64,000 nucleotides of DNA from positions 305,146 through 369,145 of the IMG/VR virus record IMGVR_UViG_3300045971_000577, one strand, 5' to 3'. Positions 53,663-64,000 of this stretch are shown here, in pieces. The notes under the pieces were generated by a model that saw only the letters and a program-made list of their open reading frames with translations, was not told the DNA's origin and made no database searches. The translations under genes were made by a program, and so were the position numbers. The stretch's first letter is position 1. Each line of letters opens with the position of its first letter.

Positions 53663-53931
53663 TATGTGTGTATTCCCCAAATCAGCCGGAACATTAGCAT
53701 ATCCTCTTCAGTAGCAAAGTATATACGCATAGAATAATATATATTAAACTTTCCGATCAGTATAGGAAATACTTCTGGTGCTGTAGACCAATAATGTTTA
53801 GATTTGGTTTCGCAAAGCCGTTGCATCATTTTCAATACCAGATCTCGAATATCAGATCCGGAAAGTTTTTTCACAATGATGAGATTGTGCAGATAATCAA
53901 CCTGATGTAGATAGGTGGTCTGGTCGTGCAT
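53662..53931 (-). CDS. Array paralogue 1
   Basis: Likely start MHDQT; FATEEDMLMFRLIWG. Confidence 0.75.
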   Translation of the reverse strand: MHDQTTYLHQVDYLHNLIIVKKLSGSDIRDLVLKMMQRLCETKSKHYWSTAPEVFPILIGKFNIYYSMRIYFATEEDMLMFRLIWGIHT

Positions 53932-54103
53932 TATGCGACTATAATACAAGATCAACTTGGTCAGATCAAGAGGGACCTATACAGTTTTGGTAAAAAATGG
54001 TTGCGCGGCTTGCCACCCTCGTCAAAATGTTACATCTCTTACAAATCTGTGTGCTGACTGGGATTTTTACGAACTGTTACAACTGTTGCATTTGTTACGT
54101 TTC

Positions 54104-54331
54104 TTACACCTTTACTGGTGCCTCGCCGTTGACTATCCATTGATCAACTGACGCCACGAGGCTAAGCGTTCGCCCACTGTCCCACTGCACAGCCACGTGC
54201 CACTGTCCCAGCACATGCCGTACGTCCAGCACCGTACCCGTTGACCATGGTGGTACGGGGTGGGGGTCGGGACCCATGCCAAGCAGGGTAATGCGTTGAC
54301 CTACGCGGGCGGGTGGAGTAAGCTGCATCAT
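54104..54331 (-). CDS. DUF4314-like protein
   Basis: GQRITLLGMGPDPHPVPPWSTGTV..V.WDSGRTLSL...D; ATG 6 nt after the -10 element. Confidence 0.7.
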   Translation of the reverse strand: MMQLTPPARVGQRITLLGMGPDPHPVPPWSTGTVLDVRHVLGQWHVAVQWDSGRTLSLVASVDQWIVNGEAPVKV

Positions 54332-54337
54332 GTGTAT

Positions 54338-54380
54338 ACTATAGCGCACACCACCCTACACGTCAATCACTGTTACATAT
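54338..54380 (-). promoter_or_regulatory. Early cassette promoter with upstream box
   Basis: ATATGTAACA-4-TTGACG-17-TATAGT. Confidence 0.75.
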
Positions 54381-54390
54381 GCTTACACCT

Positions 54391-54426
54391 GTAAGCACCT
54401 GTAAGCAAACGTAAGCAGATGTAACA
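54391..54426 (+). repeat. Four 10-bp-phased GTAA(G/C) repeats
   Basis: GTAAG at 54391, 54401, 54411; GTAAC at 54421. Confidence 0.8.
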
Positions 54427-54493
54427 ACGGTAAAGGTCTCGCACTGTGCCCGTCATACCTTGGTGACGCTATGAGGCAACGGTGAGCAAACGA

Positions 54494-54514
54494 AAGGGGC
54501 GTTCGCCGCCCCTT
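54494..54514 (-). terminator. Terminator hairpin
   Basis: AAGGGGCG-TTCGC-CGCCCCTT downstream of 54534. Confidence 0.7.
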
Positions 54515-54533
54515 GTCTGTACCCGCGCTGGTC

Positions 54534-54737
54534 TTACTTGATGCTGACGAGGACACCGTCCTTCAGCGTGCCCGTGGCGTACCACTTATGGGGTTGCGGG
54601 TAGTGCGGGCCTTCCAGGGACACCTCGCCGTCTTTGGGGCAGGGGAACGGTCCCGGGCTGTGGCAACGGACTTGCTTGCCATCAGCAATGGCACGCTTCA
54701 CTTCGGCCTTGCTCTTGAAGTTGGTATCGGTGTACAT
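54534..54737 (-). CDS. Small hypothetical protein
   Basis: Own promoter and AAGGA RBS. Confidence 0.75.
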   Translation of the reverse strand: MYTDTNFKSKAEVKRAIADGKQVRCHSPGPFPCPKDGEVSLEGPHYPQPHKWYATGTLKDGVLVSIK

Positions 54738-54744
54738 GGTGCAT

Positions 54745-54806
54745 TCCTTGTTGCGATGTATGTATTATGCAGCGTGGTGCGCTTGCTGTCAACCACTGTT
54801 ACATCT
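54745..54806 (-). promoter_or_regulatory. Early cassette promoter with box and leader
   Basis: AGATGTAACA-4-TTGACA-17-CATAAT-ACATACATCGCAACAAGGA. Confidence 0.85.
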
Positions 54807-54808
54807 TA

Positions 54809-54928
54809 TTACAGCTCGTGCCCGCCACACCAGACCAACCACCAAGTGCGGAAGTCCTCACACCCTGTCAGCGCTCCCTCCCGCATGTACGAGGCGTAGA
54901 AAGCTGGGCTTGCTTGGTGGATACTCAC
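54809..54928 (-). CDS. Small hypothetical protein (39 aa, GTG start)
   Basis: GTGA-coupled to the upstream gene; ends right at the next box. Confidence 0.5.
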   Translation of the reverse strand: MSIHQASPAFYASYMREGALTGCEDFRTWWLVWCGGHEL

Positions 54929-55140
54929 ATATCCCCGGGCAGGTAGTTGCAGCGGTTGCGGTAGCACTTGCCGTCCCACTCCGCCACGCTGATCGTATAG
55001 CCGATGCTGAGGAAGAACATCGCTTCGCCCATTGCCGCTGCTTGCCCAATCTCCATGCTGCGGTCTGGGTAGGCTGCGTCGTAGCTGACCGGGTCCCGGA
55101 TGCTGATGCGGGGCTGGGTCACATCGTATGTGGTGCGCAT
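54925..55140 (-). CDS. Small hypothetical protein
   Basis: Start MRTTYDV after AAGGAG. Confidence 0.7.
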   Translation of the reverse strand: MRTTYDVTQPRISIRDPVSYDAAYPDRSMEIGQAAAMGEAMFFLSIGYTISVAEWDGKCYRNRCNYLPGDM

Positions 55141-55147
55141 GATTGCT

Positions 55148-55211
55148 GCTCCTTGTTGCGATGTTGTTACTATAATGCAACGAACAGGGGTTGTCAACCC
55201 CTGTTACATCT
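55148..55211 (-). promoter_or_regulatory. Early cassette promoter with box and leader
   Basis: AGATGTAACA-4-TTGACA-17-TATAGT-AACAACATCGCAACAAGGAG. Confidence 0.85.
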
Positions 55212-55225
55212 GTCTCGCGTGCTGC

Positions 55226-55513
55226 TCAGCAGACCTTGGCGAAGTAATGCACGACCACAGTGTGCATCGTCTGGGTCTGCCCGTCGGCGTACACGGTGCC
55301 GGGTTGCACTTCACATTCCGCGTCGGGTGAGGCGCACAAATTACGTTCCAGCCGTTGCTTGATTCCCACGGCGCGGTAGGCGTTGTGCTGCTGCGGTGAC
55401 ATGCAACGGAACACAGTCGCGCCGCTTTCCTTCGTGACCAGCACGGCCACATCCGAGGCCTTGATTCCTTCCATCTTGTACGCGAGCAGGATGATTTGGA
55501 TGACGACTTGCAT
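55226..55513 (-). CDS. Small hypothetical protein
   Basis: AAAGGA RBS, own promoter. Confidence 0.7.
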   Translation of the reverse strand: MQVVIQIILLAYKMEGIKASDVAVLVTKESGATVFRCMSPQQHNAYRAVGIKQRLERNLCASPDAECEVQPGTVYADGQTQTMHTVVVHYFAKVC

Positions 55514-55552
55514 GTTGTTTCCTTTGTGTTGCTGCGTTGTTGCAGTGTTTAA

Positions 55553-55595
55553 ACTATAACGCAGGTTGAATGCTTATGCAAGCACTGTTACATTT
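55553..55595 (-). promoter_or_regulatory. Early cassette promoter with box
   Basis: AAATGTAACA-4-TTGCAT-17-TATAGT. Confidence 0.75.
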
Positions 55596-55619
55596 ACTTA
55601 CAAGCTGCCGGCCGGCATA

Positions 55620-56126
55620 AGCCTCGAGGTTAAGGTTAAAGACCTTAGCCCAGTGTCTAGCCCTAGTAGAGGCTTTTGCAACTTAGACTAATTTTTAGAT
55701 CGCAGCTTTAAGTCTGCTGCCGGCGAGCCTCGTGTATGCTCAAGGTCAACCGCGGTTACGTTATGAGGCTTATCGCAATAAGTCTTAGATTCTTGTTGAC
55801 CTGCCCGGACTTTTGCGATAAAATGACATTTATTGCTTGCGCAGAATGACCTACGGCTCTACACGAAAAATAGCCTCACAATGCAAAAGGCAACTACAAG
55901 TGGTCTATAGATCAACGTGTGAGGCTTTGCTGCAAAGCCCTAGATTCTTAGATCAGTTGTCTGTAAGCCTCACAGACGCGTTTTAAGATCACAAGCGGTC
56001 GCTTGCTCAGCTCTTGAGGCTTTGCGGGCAGAGCTCTGTCTGTGTGGTCAAGTGCGAGCAAACCCCTGTAAGCCTCACTTGTGGCCCAGTTACTGGGCAA
56101 AGACCTAATCTTTAGTTAGCGAGGCA
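55620..56126. repeat. Array of five AGCCTC...GAGGC(T/A) inverted pairs
   Basis: AGCCTC at 55620, 55726, 55872, 55966, 56071; GAGGC at 55669, 55765, 55921, 56016, 56121. Confidence 0.8.
55796..55824 (+). promoter_or_regulatory. Sigma70 promoter facing non-coding DNA
   Basis: TTGACC-17-TAAAAT. Confidence 0.55.
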
Positions 56127-56164
56127 GCGGTGGTCAAACGACTGGGCACCCGTAAGTGCCCAGT
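55831..56164 (+). ncRNA. Candidate ~330-nt structured ncRNA
   Basis: Promoter at 55796, no ORF of 60 aa or more, three repeated stems, closing hairpin ACTGGGCAC-6-GTGCCCAGT (56141-56164). Confidence 0.35.
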
Positions 56165-56205
56165 GCTCAAAAGAACCGCTTGTAGGGGCGTTTAGCCCCC
56201 TTGCC

Positions 56206-56433
56206 CTACCAGGGCTCGCACATATTGGGAAACGTGTTCGTCTCCTCCAGCACCGTCAACGCCCGCGCCGCTGCTGCGTAGGCCTCGTCTTCCGTGTCCC
56301 AGATCGGCGCGCTGGCGCAGTTGTTGGCGAGGTATTCCTGGCCCGGGTCGCCAGCAAATGTGGAGAAGCACGAACGCCACTTGCCGTTGGCTGCCTGTTC
56401 GGGCGCGCTGACTTCGGTGCGGATCTTGATCAT
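56206..56433 (-). CDS. Small hypothetical protein
   Basis: AAGGAG RBS, own promoter. Confidence 0.75.
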   Translation of the reverse strand: MIKIRTEVSAPEQAANGKWRSCFSTFAGDPGQEYLANNCASAPIWDTEDEAYAAAARALTVLEETNTFPNMCEPW

Positions 56434-56438
56434 GCTGT

Positions 56439-56502
56439 GCTCCTTGTTGCGATGTTGTTACTATAACGGAGTTGGGAGGCTCCGTCAAGCACTGTTACAT
56501 CT
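56439..56502 (-). promoter_or_regulatory. Early cassette promoter with box and leader
   Basis: AGATGTAACA-4-TTGACG-17-TATAGT-AACAACATCGCAACAAGGAG. Confidence 0.85.
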
Positions 56503-56701
56503 ATTTCTTCACAGCGTCAGCAACGGCTTCGTAGGAGTCAGTCGCCACCTCGATGGTCTTGTCCGTCGCCACCGAGATCGCCTTCGAGGCTTTCTTCACC
56601 TCGGACTGGTTGTCCTTGTAGAGGATGATGCCTTGGCCCGCCAGCAGCAGGGCAACGATGCTGGCGATGGCGCCCACAAACACATTCTTGAACGTCTTCA
56701 T
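56501..56701 (-). CDS. Small single-TM protein
   Basis: N-terminal hydrophobic helix; its stop overlaps the next box. Confidence 0.75.
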   Translation of the reverse strand: MKTFKNVFVGAIASIVALLLAGQGIILYKDNQSEVKKASKAISVATDKTIEVATDSYEAVADAVKK

Positions 56702-56728
56702 CTGTATTCCTTAAGTTGCAATGTCACA

Positions 56729-56771
56729 ATAATAGCTGCATACGGGCCGTCTGTCAACCCTTATTACATCT
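56729..56771 (-). promoter_or_regulatory. Early cassette promoter with box
   Basis: AGATGTAATA-4-TTGACA-17-TATTAT. Confidence 0.8.
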
Positions 56772-56943
56772 GCTTACACCACTTCTCTTCCTCGCACAAC
56801 AGCTCGTCGTCAGTGGCGTCGTCATTGAGGTAACGCTCACCGTCTTCAAAATCGCCTTCCTCACCGTCAGCTTCGTACTGTTCACGCATTGCGTGGATGA
56901 TGCGCTCGGCCTTCAAGGCGCGCTCTTGCCTGGTGAGTGCCAT
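56764..56943 (-). CDS. Small acidic hypothetical protein
   Basis: Start MALTRQE after AAGGAG. Confidence 0.75.
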   Translation of the reverse strand: MALTRQERALKAERIIHAMREQYEADGEEGDFEDGERYLNDDATDDELLCEEEKWCKQM

Positions 56944-56949
56944 TGTTGG

Positions 56950-57013
56950 CTCCTTGCTGTTGATGTATGTATTATGCAGGCTGGAACAGGGGCTGTCAAC
57001 CCCTGTTACATCT
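56950..57013 (-). promoter_or_regulatory. Early cassette promoter with box and leader
   Basis: AGATGTAACA-4-TTGACA-17-CATAAT-ACATACATCAACAGCAAGGAG. Confidence 0.85.
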
Positions 57014-57116
57014 TTCCAGTGACACGCTTCCACAGCTGGTGGAAGAAGCGCCTCACGCGGTTCTGCATCAGCTCGGCTGCGATTTCGAGGCGAAACTTCA
57101 TGTAGTCAGTGTTCAT
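57006..57116 (-). CDS. Small hypothetical protein (36 aa)
   Basis: MNTDYMKF starts 1 nt after the upstream stop; its own stop lies inside the box. Confidence 0.5.
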   Translation of the reverse strand: MNTDYMKFRLEIAAELMQNRVRRFFHQLWKRVTGKM

Positions 57117-57117
57117 G

Positions 57118-57315
57118 TTAGGCCTGCTGGATGTGTTGCGCGACGATGCGGGCGGCGCAGTCCTCGCCCTGGGCCATGTCGATCGCGCCCTGCTCCACGA
57201 GGTTGTAGCACAAGTCGCCGCCGTCGTAGAAGCCGTACTGCTCCTCCACAATCTTGTCGACCTTCTCCGAGAAGTCGTGCATGACTGCGTGCTGTGCCAT
57301 TGTGGTGCGGGGCAT
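57118..57315 (-). CDS. Small hypothetical protein
   Basis: AAGGAG RBS, own promoter. Confidence 0.75.
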   Translation of the reverse strand: MPRTTMAQHAVMHDFSEKVDKIVEEQYGFYDGGDLCYNLVEQGAIDMAQGEDCAARIVAQHIQQA

Positions 57316-57321
57316 GCTGTG

Positions 57322-57370
57322 CTCCTTGTTGCGATGTATGTATTATGCGCGTAGAAGCAGCAGTTGTCAA
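57322..57370 (-). promoter_or_regulatory. Early cassette promoter with leader (no box)
   Basis: TTGACA-17-CATAAT-ACATACATCGCAACAAGGAG. Confidence 0.85.
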
Positions 57371-57612
57371 CCGTAAATCTTCAAGGCCTCATCCATGACG
57401 ATCGTCTCCACACCGCCATCCAGAGGCATCAGGTGGTGCTGCTGGAACAGGACTTCCACGCCGGCGGCCAGCAGCACAGCGGGCATGAGCTTGTACAGAG
57501 GCTGCTGGCCGTTATCCATTTCGCACATCAGGATGTGAGCAACGGTGCGGCACGACCCCACTGGGCAACGGGCGTCACCCAGAATCATTACACGTTGTCC
57601 TATTGCGAGCAT
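57367..57612 (-). CDS. Small hypothetical protein
   Basis: Start MLAIGQR after AAGGAG. Confidence 0.7.
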   Translation of the reverse strand: MLAIGQRVMILGDARCPVGSCRTVAHILMCEMDNGQQPLYKLMPAVLLAAGVEVLFQQHHLMPLDGGVETIVMDEALKIYG

Positions 57613-57617
57613 GTTTG

Positions 57618-57680
57618 CTCCTTGCTGCGATGTGTGTACTTTATTATATAGTGGCTCCAGTGTCAAGCACTGTTACATCT
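57618..57680 (-). promoter_or_regulatory. Early cassette promoter with box and leader
   Basis: AGATGTAACA-4-TTGACA-17-TAAAGT-ACACACATCGCAGCAAGGAG. Confidence 0.8.
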
Positions 57681-57693
57681 GCTTACGCCTGCA

Positions 57694-57779
57694 CTGCCTC
57701 ATTCATCGGTCCAAGACCATTGAGCCACTACATGCGAGGCTGCTGCTGCCTCATTCATCGGTCCAAGACCATTGAGCCA
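57694..57779 (+). repeat. 34-bp direct repeat, two copies, 18-bp spacer
   Basis: CTGCCTCATTCATCGGTCCAAGACCATTGAGCCA at 57694 and 57746. Confidence 0.9.
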
Positions 57780-57807
57780 ACGCGGTGAGACCGCGTGACG
57801 ATCCGCC

Positions 57808-57949
57808 AGATGTAACAAGGTGTAACAACGGTTGCATTGATGCGCAGTGGTGTTATAGTTATGACATGGAGACAGCAGTGCAACAGCAAGCAAACAAGCA
57901 AAACTGTTACACTTTAGTTGTTGTCCAAAGCGCCCCAAAGAGTTATAGT
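57808..57949 (+). promoter_or_regulatory. Two tandem rightward promoters, the first with a double box
   Basis: AGATGTAACA-AGGTGTAACA-4-TTGCAT-16-TATAGT; TTGTCC-17-TATAGT. Confidence 0.7.
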
Positions 57950-57994
57950 TTAGTCACTGCAACACACGCTGCAAAGCAGCAAGAAAGGTAGACC

Positions 57995-58534
57995 ATGGAC
58001 AAGGGAATCCGCCCGTACGTGAACGCCAAGTTCATCGAGCTCAACGCCCAGCGCAAGGCGGGCACGCTGACCAACACGCAGTTCCGCAAGAACGTGATGT
58101 GCGACGCGATGGAAGCGTTTGGCATCACCCTGGCGAGCGCCGCGACGCACTACAACCATGCGTTCCAGGCGGTGAAGGCGGCGACACCGACGGAAGTGGA
58201 AGGCCTGGGCCGCCCCGACGACAAGAAGGGCGGGCGCAAGCGCAAGGAAGTCGCAGCCCCGACGGTGGCCAGCGTCATCCCCGTGGACCCGGCCGCGCTG
58301 CTGCAAGGGCTGCTGAATGCCCCGGCTGCGGTGCAGGTGGAGACGGCGCAAGCCGTGGAAACGCCCGCAGCCGACCCCAACGACGCCGGCGAGACGGGCG
58401 AAGTGCAGACGGTGTTCAACGTGTGCAAGAAGTCCGACGGCAGCGTGGTGGCAGAAGGCGTGAGCCTGGAAGAAGCCAAGGCGCTGGTGGAAGCGGCGGC
58501 CAAGGCCAAGAAGGCCAAGCTGTACTGGGTCTAA
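57995..58534 (+). CDS. Hypothetical protein, MDKGIR paralogue A (possible HTH-like DNA binder)
   Basis: FRKNVM...FGITLASAATHYN..GLGRP; paralogue at 61642-62070. Confidence 0.8.
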   Translation: MDKGIRPYVNAKFIELNAQRKAGTLTNTQFRKNVMCDAMEAFGITLASAATHYNHAFQAVKAATPTEVEGLGRPDDKKGGRKRKEVAAPTVASVIPVDPAALLQGLLNAPAAVQVETAQAVETPAADPNDAGETGEVQTVFNVCKKSDGSVVAEGVSLEEAKALVEAAAKAKKAKLYWV

Positions 58535-58550
58535 GCACCCAAGGTGGGAA

Positions 58551-58570
58551 GGGGGCGCAAGCCCCCTATT
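58551..58570 (+). terminator. Terminator hairpin
   Basis: GGGGGC-GCAA-GCCCCC-TATT. Confidence 0.65.
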
Positions 58571-58613
58571 CGCGCGACCAAACCCAGGTCAGAATGCAAG
58601 AGAGGAATCCAAA

Positions 58614-58808
58614 ATGATCAGTGTGATTCTGGTTGATGGAACTACCCGCATGCACATGCCGAGCAGCCGGTGGTCATTGGACGTGCAGGCCTCGTTGGCT
58701 CAGAAGGGCCACCAGCTGCAAGACCTCGGACCTGCTCCGGAGAACGACCCGCGCGATGAGGCCGAGAAGGCACGCGTCATGGAGCTTCTCGACTCCACAG
58801 GGCTGTAG
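58614..58808 (+). CDS. Small hypothetical protein
   Basis: GAGGA RBS. Confidence 0.6.
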   Translation: MISVILVDGTTRMHMPSSRWSLDVQASLAQKGHQLQDLGPAPENDPRDEAEKARVMELLDSTGL

Positions 58809-58815
58809 CAAGATC

Positions 58816-58920
58816 AGCCTCGGAACACGTCGTGAGATCGCTGATCCGACCTTCCGAGGCTACCCTGCGACATGCCTCGGGCGCGCTGTCGAGGCCCGTT
58901 GATCCTACCGCCCGAGGCAT
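58816..58920. repeat. Two GCCTC...GAGGC stem elements
   Basis: AGCCTCGGAA/TTCCGAGGCT (10 bp) and ATGCCTCGGGCG/CGCCCGAGGCAT (12 bp). Confidence 0.85.
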
Positions 58921-58961
58921 GTAACAAGATGTAACGGGGCAAGATGTAACTGGATGTAACA
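58920..58961 (+). repeat. Four TGTAAC boxes with no promoter
   Basis: TGTAAC at 58920, 58930, 58945, 58955. Confidence 0.85.
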
Positions 58962-59133
58962 ATCCAGTTCCGAGATTGAAACCCGTGCAGGCTTTCTACA
59001 CAGGAAACCTATTCAAGAGAAAAGGCCTATTAGGCCTAATCTCGTTTCCGAATCACACTACCCGGGATGCTTGCAGCTAGCGTTTAGCTATGCATTAGCC
59101 ATTTTCTGGCTAATACATTCGGCTACTTCGTGC

Positions 59134-59382
59134 TTACAGCACAAAGCCGTTGACGCACGGGGACGGGGCAAGCTCGGGGTCGCTAAACATGTCCGCCAGC
59201 ACCATGTCCATCTGGCAGTCATCCGTCTCGGGATCGTCAGCTGCCAGAACAGCATCGCCAAGGGCAGCGGCAACGCGCTTGCGTTGCCGCTCGTTGATCA
59301 CGATCGTGTACGTCCCGGGGTCGGGCATGCTGTGCTCGATGGGCATCTCGTAGGGCTTGAGCGTTGCGGGCGTGATGGGCAT
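59134..59382 (-). CDS. Small hypothetical protein
   Basis: AGGA RBS; promoter TTGCAT-17-TATACT at 59408-59436. Confidence 0.7.
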   Translation of the reverse strand: MPITPATLKPYEMPIEHSMPDPGTYTIVINERQRKRVAAALGDAVLAADDPETDDCQMDMVLADMFSDPELAPSPCVNGFVL

Positions 59383-59566
59383 GCTGTGTCCTAGTTGCTA
59401 TGCTTACAGTATAATGCAGAGCAGGAAGCAATGCAACCTGCTGTTTGATCTCAAGCTGCAAAGGCCTCTAGGCGTTTAGGCTCATAGGCCAAGATCCTGT
59501 GCGAGAACTTGTCGTAGGATTTGGACCTGTATTTCCAAATCTGGTCACGAATTTTAAATCGGAAAG

Positions 59567-59812
59567 TTAGGCAGTGTCTTTTGACCGCATGCACTCGCAC
59601 TCGTGTTGCTCAAGCTGAGTAAGCGTATCCGGCTTTGCTTCGCGTGCATTCGCTGGGTCGTTAGCCCACTTGCGGTCTTGCTCTACAAAATGCTTCTCGC
59701 CGTACACACAAAGCCCGACCGCCAGCAGGGCGAGGAGTGCCCCGCCCATGTGTGCAGTTGTTAGACCGTACAGGGCAATGAAGCCAAACAGGAGTGCCAA
59801 GCTGCGCATCAT
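59567..59812 (-). CDS. Small membrane protein
   Basis: Start MMRSLALL, ATGA-coupled; hydrophobic hairpin. Confidence 0.65.
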   Translation of the reverse strand: MMRSLALLFGFIALYGLTTAHMGGALLALLAVGLCVYGEKHFVEQDRKWANDPANAREAKPDTLTQLEQHECECMRSKDTA

Positions 59813-60051
59813 GACTTCCTGAACACCACGATGTTGGGCGCGACCTGCTCGATGAAGTACCAGGCGCCAAACAAGAACGCCAGGATGTTGATCACAGGGC
59901 AGAGAGTTACTGTGAGTCCAATGAGCAGGTTTGACAGCGTCAAGGTCTTCTCGCTCTCCAGCGTGGCATGCTTCATCTCGTAATAGGTGCAGAAGCCGAG
60001 CATGCCACCAGTCAGCAGCACGCACGCCAGGTAGAGCAAAAAGAAGCTCAT
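59809..60051 (-). CDS. Two-TM membrane protein
   Basis: Start MSFFLLY, ATGA-coupled. Confidence 0.7.
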   Translation of the reverse strand: MSFFLLYLACVLLTGGMLGFCTYYEMKHATLESEKTLTLSNLLIGLTVTLCPVINILAFLFGAWYFIEQVAPNIVVFRKS

Positions 60052-60326
60052 GCCATCAGCCCCTCGTAGATGTGCTTGTTGTTGTTGATCAGCGCCAGCA
60101 TCTCGCAAATTTGCTTGAACACACGCACGGCCTCCTCGTCGAACTCCTTGTACAAGAAGTCAACGTCGGTGATCTGCGCCCAAGGTACGTCGACATCGTA
60201 CCGGTTCCAATTGGGCCTGTGCAAGTCGTCAAGCATCACATTCACCCCGCGATGGTGGATGTCCATGACGATTACGCGAGTGTCGTCACTCAGCGTCACG
60301 TTCTCAGTGCGGGTGATTGTGTTCAT
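60048..60326 (-). CDS. Hypothetical protein (probably leaderless)
   Basis: TTGACA-17-TACAAT (60333-60361), then 6 nt and ATG. Confidence 0.75.
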   Translation of the reverse strand: MNTITRTENVTLSDDTRVIVMDIHHRGVNVMLDDLHRPNWNRYDVDVPWAQITDVDFLYKEFDEEAVRVFKQICEMLALINNNKHIYEGLMA

Positions 60327-60338
60327 GTTTGTATTGTA

Positions 60339-60464
60339 TTAGTCCTGCTGCGGTTTGTCAACAGGCACTTCGGTTTGTTTGGGCTGTTCCTGACCTTCCA
60401 TTTGTTCCAGGAAGTCGTCAAGGTCATTGTCGGGAATGCTGCCGTGTTCTTGTTGTTTGGTCAT
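60339..60464 (-). CDS. 41-aa acidic peptide (not in the ORF track)
   Basis: MTKQQEHGSIPDNDLDDFLEQME..; AGGAG RBS; promoter TTGACT-17-TATAAT at 60485-60513. Confidence 0.6.
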   Translation of the reverse strand: MTKQQEHGSIPDNDLDDFLEQMEGQEQPKQTEVPVDKPQQD

Positions 60465-60509
60465 TTCCTTCTCCTGCTGTTAGTATTATACTTAGCAGAA
60501 TGGAAATAG

Positions 60510-60908
60510 TCAACGGCGGGCTATCTGATCCTGCGGCCACTTCGCCCTTACCTGGTAGCGGCGTAGCTCTGCAGGAGTGCTGAACTGTTGGTGTGCATTG
60601 TAGAACCAATACTGCTGAGCTTCACGCTCGTGCAGGATCACAATCGGCTCATACCGGAACTCGGGGAACTGGGTTGCCGTAACATCGACTACATGATCAG
60701 CAGTGATTACGAACACATGGGCGCCCACATCGTCTTCGGACATGTGCATCTCTGCCTCGATCCCTGCTACCTTGAGTCGCTTGTGCAACTCCGAGGAAGC
60801 GATTGCACAGAACCCGCAGAGCGTGTGCTTCGAGTACAGCGGGTCCTGCGCTTCGGCCCACTCACGCACCTCTTGCGCGATGTTGCGAATGCGTTGCAGC
60901 GTGCTCAT
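60510..60908 (-). CDS. Putative papain/transglutaminase-like Cys-His-Asp enzyme
   Basis: Start MSTLQR (ATGA-coupled); GFCAIAS, AHVFV, VVDVTATQF. Confidence 0.6.
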   Translation of the reverse strand: MSTLQRIRNIAQEVREWAEAQDPLYSKHTLCGFCAIASSELHKRLKVAGIEAEMHMSEDDVGAHVFVITADHVVDVTATQFPEFRYEPIVILHEREAQQYWFYNAHQQFSTPAELRRYQVRAKWPQDQIARR

Positions 60909-61132
60909 CCGAAGCAGATGCCCTTCTTGACCATCGTGTCCGGCGACAGCGCGGAGCACACGATCTTGTGCTGGGTGGTATTGTAGAGCAGGTAGTCCTT
61001 CATGCAACCTGCAGCACGGTACAGCAGCACCATGCGCGATTCAGCGATGTCGACGCTCTCACCGCGGTGGATGAGTTTGTCCTTCTCCATGCTGTCGTCT
61101 GCATCGGTTTCGTAGACTTCGTACATAGCCAA
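60905..61132 (-). CDS. Small hypothetical protein
   Basis: AAGGAG leader; likely start at the second Met. Confidence 0.7.
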   Translation of the reverse strand: MAMYEVYETDADDSMEKDKLIHRGESVDIAESRMVLLYRAAGCMKDYLLYNTTQHKIVCSALSPDTMVKKGICFG

Positions 61133-61181
61133 CTCCTTGCTGCGATGTATGTATTATGCAGGGACTAGCCCTGCATGTCTA
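61133..61181 (-). promoter_or_regulatory. Early cassette promoter with leader
   Basis: TAGACA-17-CATAAT-ACATACATCGCAGCAAGGAG. Confidence 0.8.
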
Positions 61182-61187
61182 CCACTT

Positions 61188-61469
61188 TTAGGCGGCCGGC
61201 CCCACGCCGCGGATGTAGTAGCTCAAGTACGTGGCCCGCGTGCTGAAGCCCTTTGCGGTCAGTTCCTTGTTGATTTCTTCCACCACAGGGCGGATGTGCT
61301 GGGCGCTGCCGACATCGAACGCCACGTAGCGGACGTTGCAACCGCGGCGCTCACGCGGGGCCAGGCCCACCGGCAAGTCGGTGTAGCTCTTCATGTACTT
61401 GATACGTGCGTTGTCCAACGCCTTGCGCACCACTGCGCGGAACTCCAGGGTAGTTGCAGGATAGGGCAT
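61188..61469 (-). CDS. Small basic hypothetical protein
   Basis: Start MPYPATT after AGGA. Confidence 0.7.
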   Translation of the reverse strand: MPYPATTLEFRAVVRKALDNARIKYMKSYTDLPVGLAPRERRGCNVRYVAFDVGSAQHIRPVVEEINKELTAKGFSTRATYLSYYIRGVGPAA

Positions 61470-61475
61470 TGTGTG

Positions 61476-61540
61476 TCCTGTATGTTGCGATGTATGTATT
61501 ATGCGCTGATAGGACACACAGGTCAACCTCTGTTACATCT
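61476..61540 (-). promoter_or_regulatory. Early cassette promoter with box and leader
   Basis: AGATGTAACA-4-TTGACC-17-CATAAT-ACATACATCGCAAC. Confidence 0.85.
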
Positions 61541-61602
61541 CTGGCCTCACAGCATGTTTTGCGATCGATCAAGATGCATTGCGAGGCATCTTAGGCCAAA
61601 CG

Positions 61603-61623
61603 AAAAGGGGCCGTAGCCCCTTT
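61603..61623 (-). terminator. Terminator
   Basis: AAAAGGGGC-CGTA-GCCCCTTT. Confidence 0.75.
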
Positions 61624-61641
61624 GTGCCCTTGCTTGTTGCG

Positions 61642-62070
61642 TTAGGCTGCCGTGCCTTCCAGCACCACGGGCGTCACCGCCAGTTGCAGCAGCTCGCAAT
61701 CCGTCACATCGGACATCGTGGCTGGCGTGCCTTCCAGCAGCAGGGCAGCCGTTTCAGCCGGGTCCAGCGCGACGATCGGGATGCCAGCAGCGGTCTCGGT
61801 CTTCTTCTTGCGCCCGCCGTTGTTCTTGCCTTCCGGGCGGCCCAGGCCGCTGACCAGTTCCGGCGTCGCGGCCTTCACCAGTTGGAGCGCGTCGTTGTAG
61901 TGCGTCGCCGCGGATGCCAGCGTGCAGCCGAACTGTTCCATCAGCGTCGCCATGACGTGCTTGCGGAACGTGGTGTTGCCCTTGTCGCCAGTGAACGCCT
62001 GGCCCTTGCGGCGCAGTTCGTTTTGCTCGACGAACAGGTTGCGAGCGAAGCTGCGAATTCCCTTATCCAT
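61642..62070 (-). CDS. Hypothetical protein, MDKGIR paralogue B
   Basis: FRKHVM...FGCTLASAATHYN..GLGRP. Confidence 0.8.
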   Translation of the reverse strand: MDKGIRSFARNLFVEQNELRRKGQAFTGDKGNTTFRKHVMATLMEQFGCTLASAATHYNDALQLVKAATPELVSGLGRPEGKNNGGRKKKTETAAGIPIVALDPAETAALLLEGTPATMSDVTDCELLQLAVTPVVLEGTAA

Positions 62071-62114
62071 TTGTGACTCCTTCTTGCTACTGTGTAGCGT
62101 GTTGCGATGTAGTT

Positions 62115-62157
62115 ACTATAGCAGCGGTGGGCCTAGTGGTCTACCACTGTTACATCT
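62115..62157 (-). promoter_or_regulatory. Early cassette promoter with box
   Basis: AGATGTAACA-4-TAGACC-17-TATAGT. Confidence 0.8.
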
Positions 62158-62158
62158 T

Positions 62159-62437
62159 TTAGGCCAGCAGCACCACCGTGAGTTGCACGCGGAACGTGAT
62201 GCCCAGGTGGTTGAACAACTCCTCGAGGATGAAATCTGCAAGGTCGACGTCACAACGCATGAGGCTGTCGACGTACTGATCGAAACCCGGGATGTCGTCC
62301 TTCATCAGCGGGTCCCGCATGCAGTCGAGGCTGATGAGCACCTTCTGCTTGCCTTCCGGGCTGAAGCTGTTGCTGTCGTCCTGTTCGAAACGGCGACGCA
62401 GGTTGCTGATGCTGTGAATGACAGTGTCGACTGACAT
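62159..62437 (-). CDS. Small hypothetical protein
   Basis: Own promoter TAGACA-17-CATAAT at 62466-62494. Confidence 0.7.
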   Translation of the reverse strand: MSVDTVIHSISNLRRRFEQDDSNSFSPEGKQKVLISLDCMRDPLMKDDIPGFDQYVDSLMRCDVDLADFILEELFNHLGITFRVQLTVVLLA

Positions 62438-62504
62438 GGCGTTGCTTTGTTGCTGCGATGTATATATTATGCAGGGCTGGTCCCTGCATGTCTACCACTT
62501 TATG

Positions 62505-63368
62505 TCAGCCCATGAAGCTCAACGGAATGCCAACCTTGGCGCAGTTTGCCTTGAAGGTCCCACGTGCCAGCTGGCGATCGTAGCCGTTGGCGGCAATCAT
62601 GGCAGCGATGATCGTTTCGTAACCGTGGCCAGCGCGGTAACCCTGCAGCATGATGCGACGGCTGATGCTCGCCTTGCTTTCACCTGCAGCGGGCAGCACG
62701 TTGGGCGCAGGCAGGATGCAGCGCGGAGCAGGGGGCAGCAAGCGCGGAGCAACAGCGGGCACATACACACGGGCTTGCACAGGCAGCGCAGGGGCCACGG
62801 TCATCGTGGGCTGCTTCACGATGGGTGCCGCAAGCGTCTGCCCACGCGCACCAACGATGCTGTACGCACAGGCTGCGTGGATGCTGCCCTTGTTGTGGCG
62901 CAGGCGGATGGTAGTGCCCAGCTGGATCTTGCGGTGGTGACGGTCACCAACGCGCACCGTGTGCCCCTTGTCGCTGGTGTATTCGTACGTGATGCCCTTG
63001 CCGTACACCACTTCCTCTTGGTGACGCGTGCGACCGCTGCCGCCCAGGGCGAGGCAGATGCGCTCCCAGCCCGCGTCGTGGTTCTTGCCCAAGTCCGGCT
63101 GGATGAAGCACAGGATGTGCGCGTATTCGTGCGGCACAGTGCTGTTGAGCACGTGATCGAAAGCTTCACGCGACAGCATGTCGGTGTTGAACTTCACGAT
63201 GTAGTTGGACATCACCGGGTCGCGGTACTTCAGCCCGTGTGCCTTGCCAGCCGCCTTGCCCTTCAGGTCGAAGCTGACGCGCACGCGGGACATGTCCACG
63301 TTGTAGAGCTGATACGCACGGGCAACGACTTCCTTGCACTTGGCAAGGATTTGTTCACGGGGCGTCAT
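62505..63368 (-). CDS. SprT-like zinc metalloprotease with C-terminal extension
   Basis: KAAGKA, TVPHEYAHIL, HDAGW. Confidence 0.85.
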   Translation of the reverse strand: MTPREQILAKCKEVVARAYQLYNVDMSRVRVSFDLKGKAAGKAHGLKYRDPVMSNYIVKFNTDMLSREAFDHVLNSTVPHEYAHILCFIQPDLGKNHDAGWERICLALGGSGRTRHQEEVVYGKGITYEYTSDKGHTVRVGDRHHRKIQLGTTIRLRHNKGSIHAACAYSIVGARGQTLAAPIVKQPTMTVAPALPVQARVYVPAVAPRLLPPAPRCILPAPNVLPAAGESKASISRRIMLQGYRAGHGYETIIAAMIAANGYDRQLARGTFKANCAKVGIPLSFMG

Positions 63369-63377
63369 TTTTGCTTG

Positions 63378-63443
63378 CTCCTGTTTGCTGCGATATATGT
63401 ATTATGCAGTCAGGAACCGGTCTGGTCGACCACTGTTACATCT
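63378..63443 (-). promoter_or_regulatory. Early cassette promoter with box and leader
   Basis: AGATGTAACA-4-TCGACC-17-CATAAT-ACATATATCGCAGCAAACAGGAG. Confidence 0.8.
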
Positions 63444-63446
63444 GCC

Positions 63447-63554
63447 TCACACTGTGTCGTCAATGCTCGTGAGCAGGAACAAGAGGCCAAAGACCCAGTG
63501 CCCTGTGTAGAAACAGAACACCGCCATCAGCAGAGGAGTGGTTTGAAACTTCAC
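63447..63554 (-). CDS. 35-aa membrane micro-protein (GTG start)
   Basis: MKFQTTPLLMAVFCFYTGHWVFGLLFLLTSIDDTV. Confidence 0.55.
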   Translation of the reverse strand: MKFQTTPLLMAVFCFYTGHWVFGLLFLLTSIDDTV

Positions 63555-63564
63555 GTGCCTTGCC

Positions 63565-63666
63565 TTAGATGCTTGCGGCAATGACAAAGCACACGAGGGC
63601 GATCACCCAGTGTCCAGTGACAAGGGCGATGACGCCAGCGAAAACCAATGCTACGGATGTGCTCAT
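63565..63666 (-). CDS. 33-aa membrane micro-protein
   Basis: MSTSVALVFAGVIALVTGHWVIALVCFVIAASI; GAGG RBS. Confidence 0.6.
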   Translation of the reverse strand: MSTSVALVFAGVIALVTGHWVIALVCFVIAASI

Positions 63667-63668
63667 GC

Positions 63669-63923
63669 TTACCTCGGGCTGCTAACACGGAAGTGGAAAT
63701 CACGCGGGGCACGACCTTCGAGACGTGCCAGCTGACGTTCGATGGCCTGAACATCAGCGATCTGCGATTGGATGCGGACCATGGCGCCGGGCCACGAATC
63801 ACCGAAGCGGGCCACCTCGCCGTTGTGCTCCGAGATGACTTCGTAGAGACCCTCCAGGGCTTCCCAGTCAGTCGCTTCGTTGGCGTAACGGATGAACTCG
63901 TCACGCGTCATCGGCTTCGACAT
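63669..63923 (-). CDS. Small hypothetical protein
   Basis: Start MSKPMTR after AAGGAG. Confidence 0.75.
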   Translation of the reverse strand: MSKPMTRDEFIRYANEATDWEALEGLYEVISEHNGEVARFGDSWPGAMVRIQSQIADVQAIERQLARLEGRAPRDFHFRVSSPR

Positions 63924-63930
63924 GTTGTTG

Positions 63931-63980
63931 GCTCCTTGCTGCGATGTCTGTATTATGCACGCAAGGAGCCACCCTGTCAA
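63931..63980 (-). promoter_or_regulatory. Early cassette promoter with leader
   Basis: TTGACA-17-CATAAT-ACAGACATCGCAGCAAGGAG. Confidence 0.85.
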
Positions 63981-64000
63981 CCGCTAGTTGAACGCCTGCC

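What the first reader, a model, noticed from the sequence alone, without database searches (positions are those of the whole stretch)
54371..58961. The box is one unit of a 10-bp helically phased repeat that includes the -35 element
Seen: GTAAG/GTAAC at 54391, 54401, 54411, 54421; TGTAAC at 57811/57821, 58920/58930 and 58945/58955. In promoters GTAACA starts 10 bp before TTGACA, and GTAAGC lies a further 10 bp upstream at ~56771 and ~57681. 54371-54426 also forms a 16-bp inverted repeat with one mismatch. Known: winged-helix OmpR/PhoB-type regulators bind direct repeats one turn apart. Inference: a protein polymerises on one DNA face up to the -35, acting as activator or shut-off repressor, and promoter-less clusters act as nucleation or decoy sites.
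Basis: partly seen in the sequence, partly recalled or inferred. Interest (0 to 1): 0.7.

Follow-up and report, generated by a model that had tools for sequence, protein, structure and literature searches.

The report
Phased regulator boxes on phage early promoters
A giant pond phage carries a short DNA box repeated every 10 bases, always on the same helix face just upstream of the -35 element of about half its early promoters; it looks like a docking site for an OmpR-type regulator, probably the host's, and unrelated phages share the layout.

Summary
The window is the last 64 kb of a 369-kb T4-like jumbo phage from a pond metagenome. Its final 10 kb, plus the first 3.3 kb of the circular assembly, form a GC-rich island of small genes, each with its own near-consensus sigma-70 promoter. 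Fifteen of about 26 island promoters carry AGATGTAACAG with GTAACA starting exactly 10 bp before the -35. Six have a second box 10 bp further upstream. Same-strand GTAA[CG] pairs 10 bp apart: 10 observed, 0.03 expected. Pooled over the phage's relatives (119 kb), forward boxes lie 10 (44), 19-20 (28) or 29-30 bp (6) from the -35 and almost nowhere else. Reverse-oriented boxes show no preferred distance. The same box-plus-(-35) composite occurs in an unrelated T5-like phage and in low-GC phage contigs. It is absent from cultured relatives (PA5oct, T5, Vibrio 234P1). None of the phages encodes an OmpR-type DNA-binding or receiver domain. The box matches published OmpR, CpxR, RpaB and WalR half-sites in sequence and spacing. 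Best reading: head-to-tail sites for a winged-helix response regulator, probably the host's, in activating position. The binder and the host are unidentified. The 57811/57821 cluster is a promoter, not promoter-less.

The parts
54338..54387 (-). Boxed promoter with two boxes: distal GTAAGC (54386-54381), proximal GTAACA (54376-54371), -35 TTGACG (54366-54361), 17-nt spacer, -10 TATAGT (54343-54338).
54390..54436 (+). Promoter-less array of 4-5 head-to-tail boxes at exact 10-bp steps (54391, 54401, 54411, 54421, weak 54431). It is inverted relative to the neighbouring promoter. With 54371-54386 it forms the 16-bp inverted repeat with one mismatch.
   Evidence: no -35/-10 pair follows it
54764..54813 (-). 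Boxed promoter: distal GTAATA, proximal GTAACA (54802), -35 TTGACA 54792, -10 CATAAT ending at 54764.
55169..55211 (-). Boxed promoter with one box (GTAACA at 55207), -35 TTGACA 55197, -10 TATAGT.
55553..55602 (-). Boxed promoter: distal GTAAGT (55601), proximal GTAACA (55591), -35 TTGCAT, -10 TATAGT.
56460..56502 (-). Boxed promoter with one box (56498), -35 TTGACG 56488, -10 TATAGT. The stop codon of the upstream gene abuts the box.
56729..56778 (-). Boxed promoter: distal GTAAGC (56777), proximal GTAATA (56767), -35 TTGACA 56757, -10 TATTAT.
56971..57013 (-). Boxed promoter with one box (57009), -35 TTGACA 56999, -10 CATAAT.
57342..57370 (-). Unboxed island promoter, given for contrast: TTGACA, 17-nt spacer, CATAAT. 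It has the same core quality and the same transcribed leader but no box.
57638..57687 (-). Boxed promoter with two boxes: GTAAGC (57686), GTAACA (57676), -35 TTGACA 57666.
57810..57859 (+). Boxed promoter on the + strand: boxes at 57812 and 57822, -35 TTGCAT 57832-57837, 16-nt spacer, -10 TATAGT 57854-57859.
   Evidence: the same two-box promoter stands before the orthologous gene in relatives
57995..58534 (+). The one of the island's two + strand genes (the other is 58614-58808) that has its own boxed promoter (179 aa). It belongs to a large unannotated phage family. The model shows an N-terminal three-helix domain, a basic GRP/GGRKPK segment and a small C-terminal alpha/beta domain. It is a candidate phage-encoded binder, without support so far.
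58919..58961 (+). Promoter-less array of four boxes (58921, 58931, 58946, 58956; steps of 10, 15 and 10) in the convergent gap, about 60 bp before a two-way terminator-like hairpin (59023-59037).
   Evidence: a box cluster at the equivalent place in G002 (L162 4083-4127)
61498..61540 (-). Boxed promoter with one box (61536), -35 TTGACC, -10 CATAAT.
62115..62157 (-). Boxed promoter with one box (62153), -35 TAGACC, -10 TATAGT.
63401..63443 (-). Boxed promoter with one box (63439), -35 TCGACC, -10 CATAAT.
54028..54108 (-). Looser box cluster (GTAAGA/GTAACA at 54107, 54098, 54080, 54042, 54033; steps of 9 and 18) at the left edge of the GC-rich island. A partner cluster in opposite orientation lies at the right edge (genome 3234-3253).

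Best explanation
The box (consensus AGATGTAACAG, variants GTAAG and GTAAA) is the half-site of a sequence-specific DNA-binding protein. The protein binds head-to-tail, one unit per helical turn, on the DNA face that carries the -35 hexamer. It marks a sub-class, about half, of the sigma-70-type early promoters of this jumbo phage. The most likely binder is a winged-helix response regulator of the OmpR/PhoB family supplied by the host. From about -45/-55, or one turn further at -55/-65 with an A-tract in between, it would contact RNA polymerase (sigma region 4 or the alpha C-terminal domain). It would then boost or gate early transcription according to the host's signalling state. The promoter-less arrays would be extra high-affinity sites, acting as reservoir, sponge or roadblock. 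Shown: the motif, its phasing, its fixed orientation, its conservation in relatives, its occurrence in unrelated phages, and the absence of an OmpR-type protein from the phages. Inferred: that a protein binds, that it is the host's, and that the effect is activation.
For: (1) The box is about as conserved as the -35 and -10, at about 2 bits per position, while the promoter spacers differ completely. This points to selection, not recent copying. (2) Phasing is rigid. In 119 kb pooled from the clade, forward boxes lie 10 (44 cases), 19-20 (28) or 29-30 bp (6) before the -35, and only 6 lie at any other distance up to 70 bp. Adjacent boxes are 10 bp apart in 39 of 52 cases. (3) Orientation is fixed, since reverse-oriented boxes show no preferred distance. 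This is as expected for asymmetric monomers bound in tandem. (4) There is a natural full-turn experiment. The orthologous promoter of the 179-aa gene has its boxes at +10/+11 in four phages and at +19/+20 in six, never at a half turn. In the +19/+20 class an A-tract fills the gap. (5) Published half-sites match in sequence and period: OmpR TGT(A/T)ACA(A/T), CpxR GTAAA-N4-8-GTAAA, RpaB HLR1 with a 10-bp period and YycF sites such as TGTAACATTAATGTAAT. (6) Assuming the -35 hexamer spans -35 to -30, the two-box unit is centred near -48.5 or -58.5. Both fall inside the -66 to -45 window in which RpaB activates. (7) The distribution follows something other than phage lineage. The composite is present in the jumbo clade (G000, G001, G002, L159-L172) and in a T5-like phage (G003). 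It is absent from PA5oct, T5 and Vibrio phage 234P1. G003 shares no recognisable regulator with G000. (8) No Trans_reg_C or Response_reg domain is found in G000-G004, nor Trans_reg_C in G005. (9) The same box-box-TTGAC composite exists in bacterial chromosomes of several phyla. Examples lie upstream of an NlpC/P60 hydrolase, lpxC and a UDP-glucose dehydrogenase.
Against: No binder was identified and the host is unknown. The core promoters are already near consensus (TTGACA, 17 nt, CATAAT or TATAGT), so an activator is not obviously needed. Boxed and unboxed promoters do not differ in core quality. In the T5-like phage some boxes lie downstream of promoters, which looks operator-like. The low-GC contigs with the box probably have hosts from other phyla, so 'one host factor' must mean a family of similar regulators. 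The bacterial scan gave 32 hits, fewer than my rough chance estimate of about 70, with no taxon clearly enriched. It therefore does not point to a host. Matches to published consensus sequences are short and shared by several regulators.
Confidence: 0.45

Rival explanations
1. A phage-encoded protein binds the boxes and either activates the boxed early sub-class or shuts it off later. It could be an early gene product or a protein delivered with the virion. The 179-aa protein (57995-58534) is the contextual candidate and would then regulate its own promoter.
For: That gene is transcribed against the island's prevailing direction, and only one small gene (58614-58808) follows it on the same strand. 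In nearly every relative it keeps a two- or three-box promoter. Its family is large, conserved and unannotated, with an invariant basic GLGR..K.GGRK segment. The N-terminal three-helix domain gives weak winged-helix-type structural matches, Z 5-7.5, including a SARP DNA-binding domain. Boxes downstream of promoters in the T5-like phage would suit a repressor.
Against: The family is absent from the 98%-complete T5-like phage G003, which uses the same boxes. Blastp found no other regulator shared by G000 and G003. The structural matches do not rise above the tool's stated background. Pfam and PHROGs found no DNA-binding family in about 28 island proteins. Immediate-early promoters cannot depend on a protein that has not yet been made. 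A position upstream of the core promoter at integral turns is atypical for steric repression.
Confidence: 0.3
2. The boxes are read directly by RNA polymerase. They would be a host-specific (or phage-modified) equivalent of the two UP-element subsites for the alpha C-terminal domains, centred near -42 and -52, with no separate regulator.
For: One or two boxes occupy about -45 to -40 and -55 to -50. From general knowledge of E. coli UP elements, that is where the proximal and distal alpha subsites lie. The phage relies on host polymerase as far as can be judged: its nearest cultured relative PA5oct does. Sharing between unrelated phages of one habitat would fit a host-polymerase feature.
Against: The box is a specific mixed sequence, not an A/T tract. 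Arrays of 4-5 boxes (54391-54431) and of 12 or more (L077), and boxes one or two turns further out or downstream of promoters, exceed what two alpha domains can use. In the +19/+20 class a true A-tract occupies the proximal subsite while the boxes sit further upstream. That layout is typical of an activator plus alpha.
Confidence: 0.1
3. The repeats serve a process other than transcription: replication iterons, packaging or partition sites, or recombination hot spots that shuffle promoter-gene cassettes.
For: There are promoter-less arrays at island edges and at a convergent junction. In small low-GC contigs the arrays lie in a repeat-rich gap next to a terminase-small-subunit-like gene. One contig ends in 12 or more tandem boxes.
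Against: Most boxes, 78 of 84 forward boxes within 70 bp upstream of a promoter-like site, are locked at 10, 19-20 or 29-30 bp to a -35 hexamer in a fixed orientation. No non-transcriptional role explains that. The units are 10 bp, shorter than typical iterons, and no initiator or partition gene was found in the island.
Confidence: 0.07
4. The periodicity is a by-product of copying one promoter cassette many times and has no function of its own.
For: The promoters share a long conserved leader (ACATACATCGCAACAAGGAG). Assembly graphs break at these repeats.
Against: Spacers and flanks are unrelated between copies while the box stays invariant. The box persists in relatives whose proteins are only 40-60% identical, moves by whole turns, and occurs in unrelated phages.
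Confidence: 0.03

Closest known systems
OmpR/PhoB-family response-regulator sites (OmpR boxes, CpxR box, RpaB HLR1, WalR/YycF box, pho box)
   Same: They are head-to-tail direct repeats of a 6-8 bp half-site with a GTAAC/GTTAC-type core. The period is 10-11 bp. They lie just upstream of or abutting the -35 on one helix face, sometimes in arrays of more than two units. Sites centred near -50 activate.
   Different: No regulator has been tied to these boxes. The promoters already have consensus -35 and -10 elements, whereas regulator-dependent promoters usually lack a good -35. The sites form a regulon of a lytic jumbo phage and recur in unrelated phages. There are extra promoter-less arrays.
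Host response-regulator sites in cyanophage genomes (HLR1 motifs reported in cyanophages, per PMC6525291; pho boxes used by cyanophages, from memory: Zeng and Chisholm 2012)
   Same: A phage promoter is wired to a host OmpR/PhoB-family regulator through direct-repeat boxes.
   Different: As I recall, those cases concern a few auxiliary metabolic genes, not a whole class of early promoters. The host here is probably not a cyanobacterium: there is no psbA, Shine-Dalgarno sites are strong, and the nearest cultured relatives infect Proteobacteria.
UP elements and the A-rich upstream regions of T4 early promoters (from memory)
   Same: Conserved upstream promoter sequence at about -42 and -52, one turn apart, in early promoters of a T4-type phage.
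   Different: Those are A/T tracts read by the alpha subunit. Here the element is a specific GTAAC word, it can shift by whole turns, and it forms long arrays.
Lambda CII sites (TTGC-N6-TTGC) and SARP heptamer repeats (from memory)
   Same: Direct repeats one turn apart, in register with the -35, bound by an activator.
   Different: CII repeats flank the -35 of weak promoters. SARP repeats have an 11-bp period and replace the -35. The sequences differ.
Mycobacteriophage stoperators and plasmid parC iterons (from memory)
   Same: Many copies of a short asymmetric site with a fixed orientation relative to transcription. Iterons with a 10-11 bp period flank a promoter and are coated by one protein.
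   Different: Stoperators lie inside transcription units and belong to temperate phages with a known repressor. parC needs ParR and ParM. Neither context is seen here.

Membership tests
OmpR/PhoB-type response-regulator operator | Direct (head-to-tail) repeats of a short half-site with a centre-to-centre distance of about one helical turn | tested here: met
   Adjacent same-strand boxes are 10 bp apart in 39 of 52 cases and 9 bp in 3. In the island the d=10 count is 10 against 0.03 expected.
OmpR/PhoB-type response-regulator operator | Half-site sequence matches a published consensus of a family member | tested here: met
   TGTAACA(A/G) against OmpR TGT(A/T)ACA(A/T). The GTAAA-N5-GTAAA variants in L165 and L171 match the CpxR consensus. 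The reverse complement GTTACATC matches 7 of 8 positions of the HLR1 unit, with the same 10-bp period. Such short matches cannot tell which regulator is involved.
OmpR/PhoB-type response-regulator operator | Fixed orientation and helical register relative to the -35 and the start site | tested here: met
   Forward boxes lie at 10, 19-20 or 29-30 bp from the -35. Reverse boxes are scattered.
OmpR/PhoB-type response-regulator operator | Bound by a protein with a winged-helix Trans_reg_C domain, usually with a receiver domain | not testable with these tools
   No PF00486 match in G000-G005 and no PF00072 match in G000-G004. Such a protein would have to be the host's, and the host is unknown.
UP element (alpha C-terminal domain site) | A/T-rich tracts at about -38 to -59 | tested here: not met
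   The position fits, but the box is a mixed, specific sequence (consensus AGATGTAACAG). True A-tracts appear separately in the +19/+20 class.
T4 MotA-dependent middle promoter | A MotA box centred at about -30 that replaces the -35 | tested here: not met
   All boxed promoters keep a TTGACA-type -35, and the box lies upstream of it. The presence of MotA or AsiA genes was not tested.
Replication iterons or plasmid-type centromere | Clustered repeats next to an initiator or partition gene, independent of promoter register | tested here: not met
   Most boxes are locked to -35 hexamers. No initiator or partition family was found among the island proteins.
RpaB HLR1 (cyanobacterial host) | The host is a cyanobacterium | tested here: inconclusive
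   No psbA in G000-G004. The nearest cultured relatives infect Pseudomonas, Sinorhizobium and Erwinia. Island genes have strong AAGGAG ribosome-binding sites. None of these excludes a freshwater cyanobacterial host.

The most novel reading that the evidence does not exclude
Unrelated lytic phages of one habitat, a T4-like jumbo clade and a T5-like phage, have converged on the same upstream enhancer for their early promoters. The enhancer is a phased array of sites for a host OmpR-family stress or redox response regulator. The first minutes of infection would then be gated by host signalling. The promoter-less arrays, multiplied by genome replication, would soak up the regulator and blunt the host's own response.
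Probability: 0.25. Interest if true: 0.75.

Novelty: new variant of a known kind. Interest (0 to 1): 0.58.

Why it matters
How jumbo phages without their own RNA polymerase order their early genes is poorly known, and this whole clade is uncultivated. A sharply defined, testable cis-element divides the early promoters into two classes, moves only by whole helical turns and recurs in unrelated phages. It gives a handle on that control. It also offers a possible marker of the host, whose regulator must read the box. If the binder is a host response regulator, this would be a regulon-scale example of a phage wiring its immediate-early programme to host two-component signalling. The compact module of box plus consensus promoter is also a ready-made part for regulated expression.

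Tried and rejected
(1) Rfam and tRNA scans of the island found nothing.
(2) Megablast of the region against cultured phages found no match. tblastn of the 179-aa protein found none either.
(3) I looked for a phage-encoded OmpR-type regulator. Trans_reg_C and Response_reg are absent.
(4) Pfam and PHROGs on about 28 island proteins gave only SprT-like (62505-63368) and DUF4314 (54104-54337).
(5) The AlphaFold model of the 179-aa protein is good for both domains (pLDDT 82). Foldseek against the PDB and AlphaFold DB gave nothing significant. VIA-align gave a best Z of 7.5, within the tool's stated background.
(6) A protein-DNA complex prediction of that protein on the two-box DNA was not folded by the tool. 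It is no evidence either way.
(7) A protein-atlas lead to phage T5 protein A2 was rejected by profile comparison, probability 0.3%.
(8) Host identification failed. The 179-aa family is not in 185,579 species genomes. Cluster look-ups gave no names. psbA is absent. The bacterial DNA scan gave scattered taxa.
(9) No RNA run was listed for this phage, so start sites and timing could not be read.
(10) A chimeric-assembly explanation for the GC-rich island is rejected. Contigs of two pond runs cross the boundary at about 54000 without differences, and relatives have the same island.
(11) Readings as MotA box, NtcA site (GTA-N8-TAC), LexA box, CRP-like dyad (TGT-N11-ACA) and IHF site were considered by eye. 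All were dropped for wrong spacing or position.

Full report
What the window is. The window is bases 305146-369145 of a 369,145-bp IMG/VR virus record. Its ends overlap by 127 identical bases, so the assembly is circular. The portal, major head, baseplate and tail-fibre genes in the window are of the T4 type. The major head protein is 77.7% identical to that of Pseudomonas jumbo phage PA5oct. PA5oct is reported to depend on the host RNA polymerase and to use TTGAC/TATAATA promoters (PMC7318152). The DNA comes from pond metagenomes.

The GC-rich island. The bulk of the genome is about 42% G+C. Window 54000-64000 together with genome 1-3300 is 54-61% G+C. This 13.4-kb island holds about 30 small genes. 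All but two lie on the - strand, nearly all have no known family, and most have their own promoter. A consensus scan finds 22 sigma-70-like sites in 53900-64000, against 4.5 +/- 2.1 in shuffles. Nearly all have 17-nt spacers. The island is not an assembly artefact. Contigs from two runs cross its left edge without a single difference, and relatives carry the same island in the same gene order.

The observation. Fifteen island promoters share the layout AGATGTAACAG-(T/G)G(G/C)-TTGAC, then 17 nt, then CATAAT or TATAGT, then the leader ACATACATCGCAACAAGGAG. The box is as well conserved as the -35 and -10, while the spacers are unrelated. GTAACA always starts 10 bp before the -35. Six of the fifteen have a second box (GTAAGC, GTAAGT, GTAATA, GTAACA or GTAACT) exactly 10 bp further up.

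Statistics. Same-strand GTAA[CG] pairs 10 bp apart number 10, against 0.03 expected (maximum 1 in 300 shuffles). With the preceding T the count is 7 against 0.00. An unbiased 7-mer count puts the box words among the most enriched in the island. About eleven further island promoters have equally good core elements and the same leader but no box. The box therefore defines a sub-class and is not part of the basic promoter. Outside the island the genome has no such tandem boxes.

The pair at 57811/57821 is the upstream part of a + strand promoter: TTGCAT at 57832, a 16-nt spacer, TATAGT at 57854. It drives 57995-58534, the first of only two + strand genes in the island. Only 54391-54431 (four to five units at exact 10-bp steps) and 58920-58961 (four units; steps of 10, 15 and 10) lack a usable -35/-10 pair.

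Relatives. A pattern scan of viral contigs, followed by searches of the records it hit, found the same promoter class in two related jumbo phages. These are G001 (385 kb, complete) and G002 (a 152-kb fragment). Their island proteins are 40-65% identical to those of the window. The 179-aa + strand gene belongs to a family of more than 750 unannotated metagenomic proteins. Loci around fourteen of its homologues were fetched.

Pooled phasing. Over 119 kb of these islands there are 176 promoter-like sites. Forward boxes (TGTAA followed by A, C or G) start 10 bp (44 cases), 19-20 bp (28) or 29-30 bp (6) before the -35. Only six lie at any other distance up to 70 bp. Reverse-oriented boxes are scattered with no preferred distance. 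Adjacent boxes are 10 bp apart in 39 of 52 cases.

A natural full-turn experiment. Its two (or three) boxes sit at +10/+11 in four phages and at +19/+20 in six, and never at a half turn. In the +19/+20 class the gap is filled by a run of four to six A.

Beyond the clade. A scan for two tandem boxes found the motif in other viral contigs.
- G003 is a 104-kb, 98%-complete phage. Its terminase is closest (47%) to T5-like Vibrio phages. It has a 5-kb region (59.5-64.6 kb) of strong promoters of the form GTAACAGATGTAACAGCGC-TTGACA, then 18 nt, then TATAAT. Further boxes lie downstream of some promoters.
- Two low-GC contigs (30-33% G+C) carry four tandem boxes followed by TTGAC at +10, in a repeat-rich gap.
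- A fragment related to G003 ends in at least twelve tandem boxes.
- G003 lacks the 179-aa family and shares no recognisable regulator with the window's phage.
- PA5oct, T5 and Vibrio phage 234P1, which are the cultured relatives of these lineages, have no tandem TGTAAC at all.
So the motif does not follow phage ancestry. That pattern is expected if the reader of the motif belongs to the host.

What it resembles. Four published binding sites of OmpR/PhoB-family response regulators share the core and the period.
- OmpR: TGT(A/T)ACA(A/T) (PMC9827838).
- CpxR: GTAAA-N4-8-GTAAA (PMC5063474). Some relatives use exactly GTAAA-N5-GTAAA.
- RpaB HLR1: two 8-mers (G/T)TTACA(T/A)(T/A) separated by 2 nt, which gives a 10-bp period. 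Sites centred at -66 to -45 activate and sites near the start repress (PMC6525291).
- YycF/WalR: sites such as TGTAACATTAATGTAAT (PMC5405149).
Placing the -35 hexamer at -35 to -30 is an inference from the 17-nt spacer. On that basis the two-box unit here is centred near -48.5, or near -58.5 in the +19/+20 class. Both fall in the activating window described for RpaB.

Bacterial genomes. The phages encode neither a Trans_reg_C nor a receiver domain. A scan of 185,579 bacterial and archaeal genomes for GTAAC-N4-TGTAACA-N4-TTGAC gave 32 sites in several phyla. Some are conserved within a lineage. Some lie upstream of envelope genes: an NlpC/P60 hydrolase in Lachnospiraceae, lpxC, and a UDP-glucose dehydrogenase. 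This shows that the composite is a natural cellular promoter layout. It does not identify the host, because the number of hits is below my rough chance estimate.

Mechanism. I think the boxes are head-to-tail sites for a winged-helix response regulator, most likely the host's. It would bind on the face of the -35 and help RNA polymerase at a sub-class of early promoters. In the +10 class it would touch sigma region 4. In the +19/+20 class the alpha C-terminal domain would sit on the A-tract in between. These contacts are inferred from how the family works elsewhere; none is shown here. The promoters are near consensus, so the gain may be competitive strength or conditional gating rather than on/off control. 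The promoter-less arrays may hold, titrate or block; this is untested.

Main rival. The main rival is a phage-encoded binder, with the 179-aa protein as the contextual candidate. Its promoter keeps the boxes in nearly every relative. It has a confident three-helix N-terminal domain and an invariant basic segment. However, structural searches stay within background, the T5 A2 lead failed, and G003 lacks the family. Direct reading by the alpha subunit, a non-transcriptional role and a mere copying artefact each fit less of the evidence (see Rival explanations).

Verdict. The element is a new variant of a known kind. The open points are the identity of the binder, the identity of the host, and the sign of the effect.

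Noticed in passing
window 54000-64000 and genome 1-3300: A 13.4-kb island of 54-61% G+C sits in a 42% G+C jumbo phage. It is packed with about 30 small genes of no known family, nearly all on one strand. Each has a near-consensus sigma-70 promoter and the same leader, ACATACATCGCAACAAGGAG. The island and its gene order are conserved in relatives.
   Followed up: partly
window 55600-56190: A 600-bp stretch has no plausible gene. It has a strong + strand promoter (TTGACC 55796, 17 nt, TAAAAT 55824), and a G+C-rich inverted repeat (about 56183-56205, seen by eye; the terminator scan did not list it) lies at its end. GTGAGGC/GCCTCAC words are repeated inside it. It may encode a non-coding RNA of about 370 nt. 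There is no Rfam match.
   Followed up: partly
window 57694-57727 and 57749-57782: A perfect 34-bp direct repeat lies in the divergent control region between the promoters at 57676 (-) and 57812 (+). Assembly graphs of the pond runs break here.
   Followed up: no
island-wide, e.g. window 58810-58920, 61550, 63450, 57700: A second over-represented word, (C/T)GAGGC or GTGAGGC, is about 5 times over expectation for the 7-mer. It often lies a short, variable distance upstream of the boxes, and related words (GCGAGGC) recur in relatives. It may be a second binding site.
   Followed up: partly
window 57006-57008, 57367-57369, 56501-56503: Stop codons of upstream open reading frames lie inside or against the next promoter. 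A TAA lies inside the GTAACA box, where an 81-aa reading frame of doubtful reality (57006-57251) ends. The TGA that ends gene 57367-57612 lies inside the TTGACA -35. A TAG abuts a box. The packing is extremely tight.
   Followed up: no
window 58943-58968: An 8-bp stem (AACTGGAT/ATCCAGTT) has a box (GTAACA) as its loop, inside the promoter-less array. In G002 the equivalent cluster is a perfect 18-bp palindrome of two boxes on each arm (L162 4083-4127).
   Followed up: no
window 57995-58534; genome 22683-23306; G001 (six matches): The 179-aa family has several paralogues per jumbo genome. Shorter paralogues keep only the N-terminal domain (L166, L169, L170).
   Followed up: partly
genome 55113-55170 (outside the window): An unrelated tandem repeat with a 28-bp period also contains GTAAC words.
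   Followed up: no
L077 4899-5117; L068 5518-6000; L075 448-960: Other viral contigs carry long arrays of the same box. One has at least 12 units at steps of 9-10 bp at a contig end. Two low-GC contigs have 3-4 units beside other repeat families (AACGTGCAAAACGTGCA; CCGACTGAGTAGTCGG five times).
   Followed up: partly
window 32940-42515: An open reading frame of 3191 aa lies in the tail and baseplate region.
   Followed up: no
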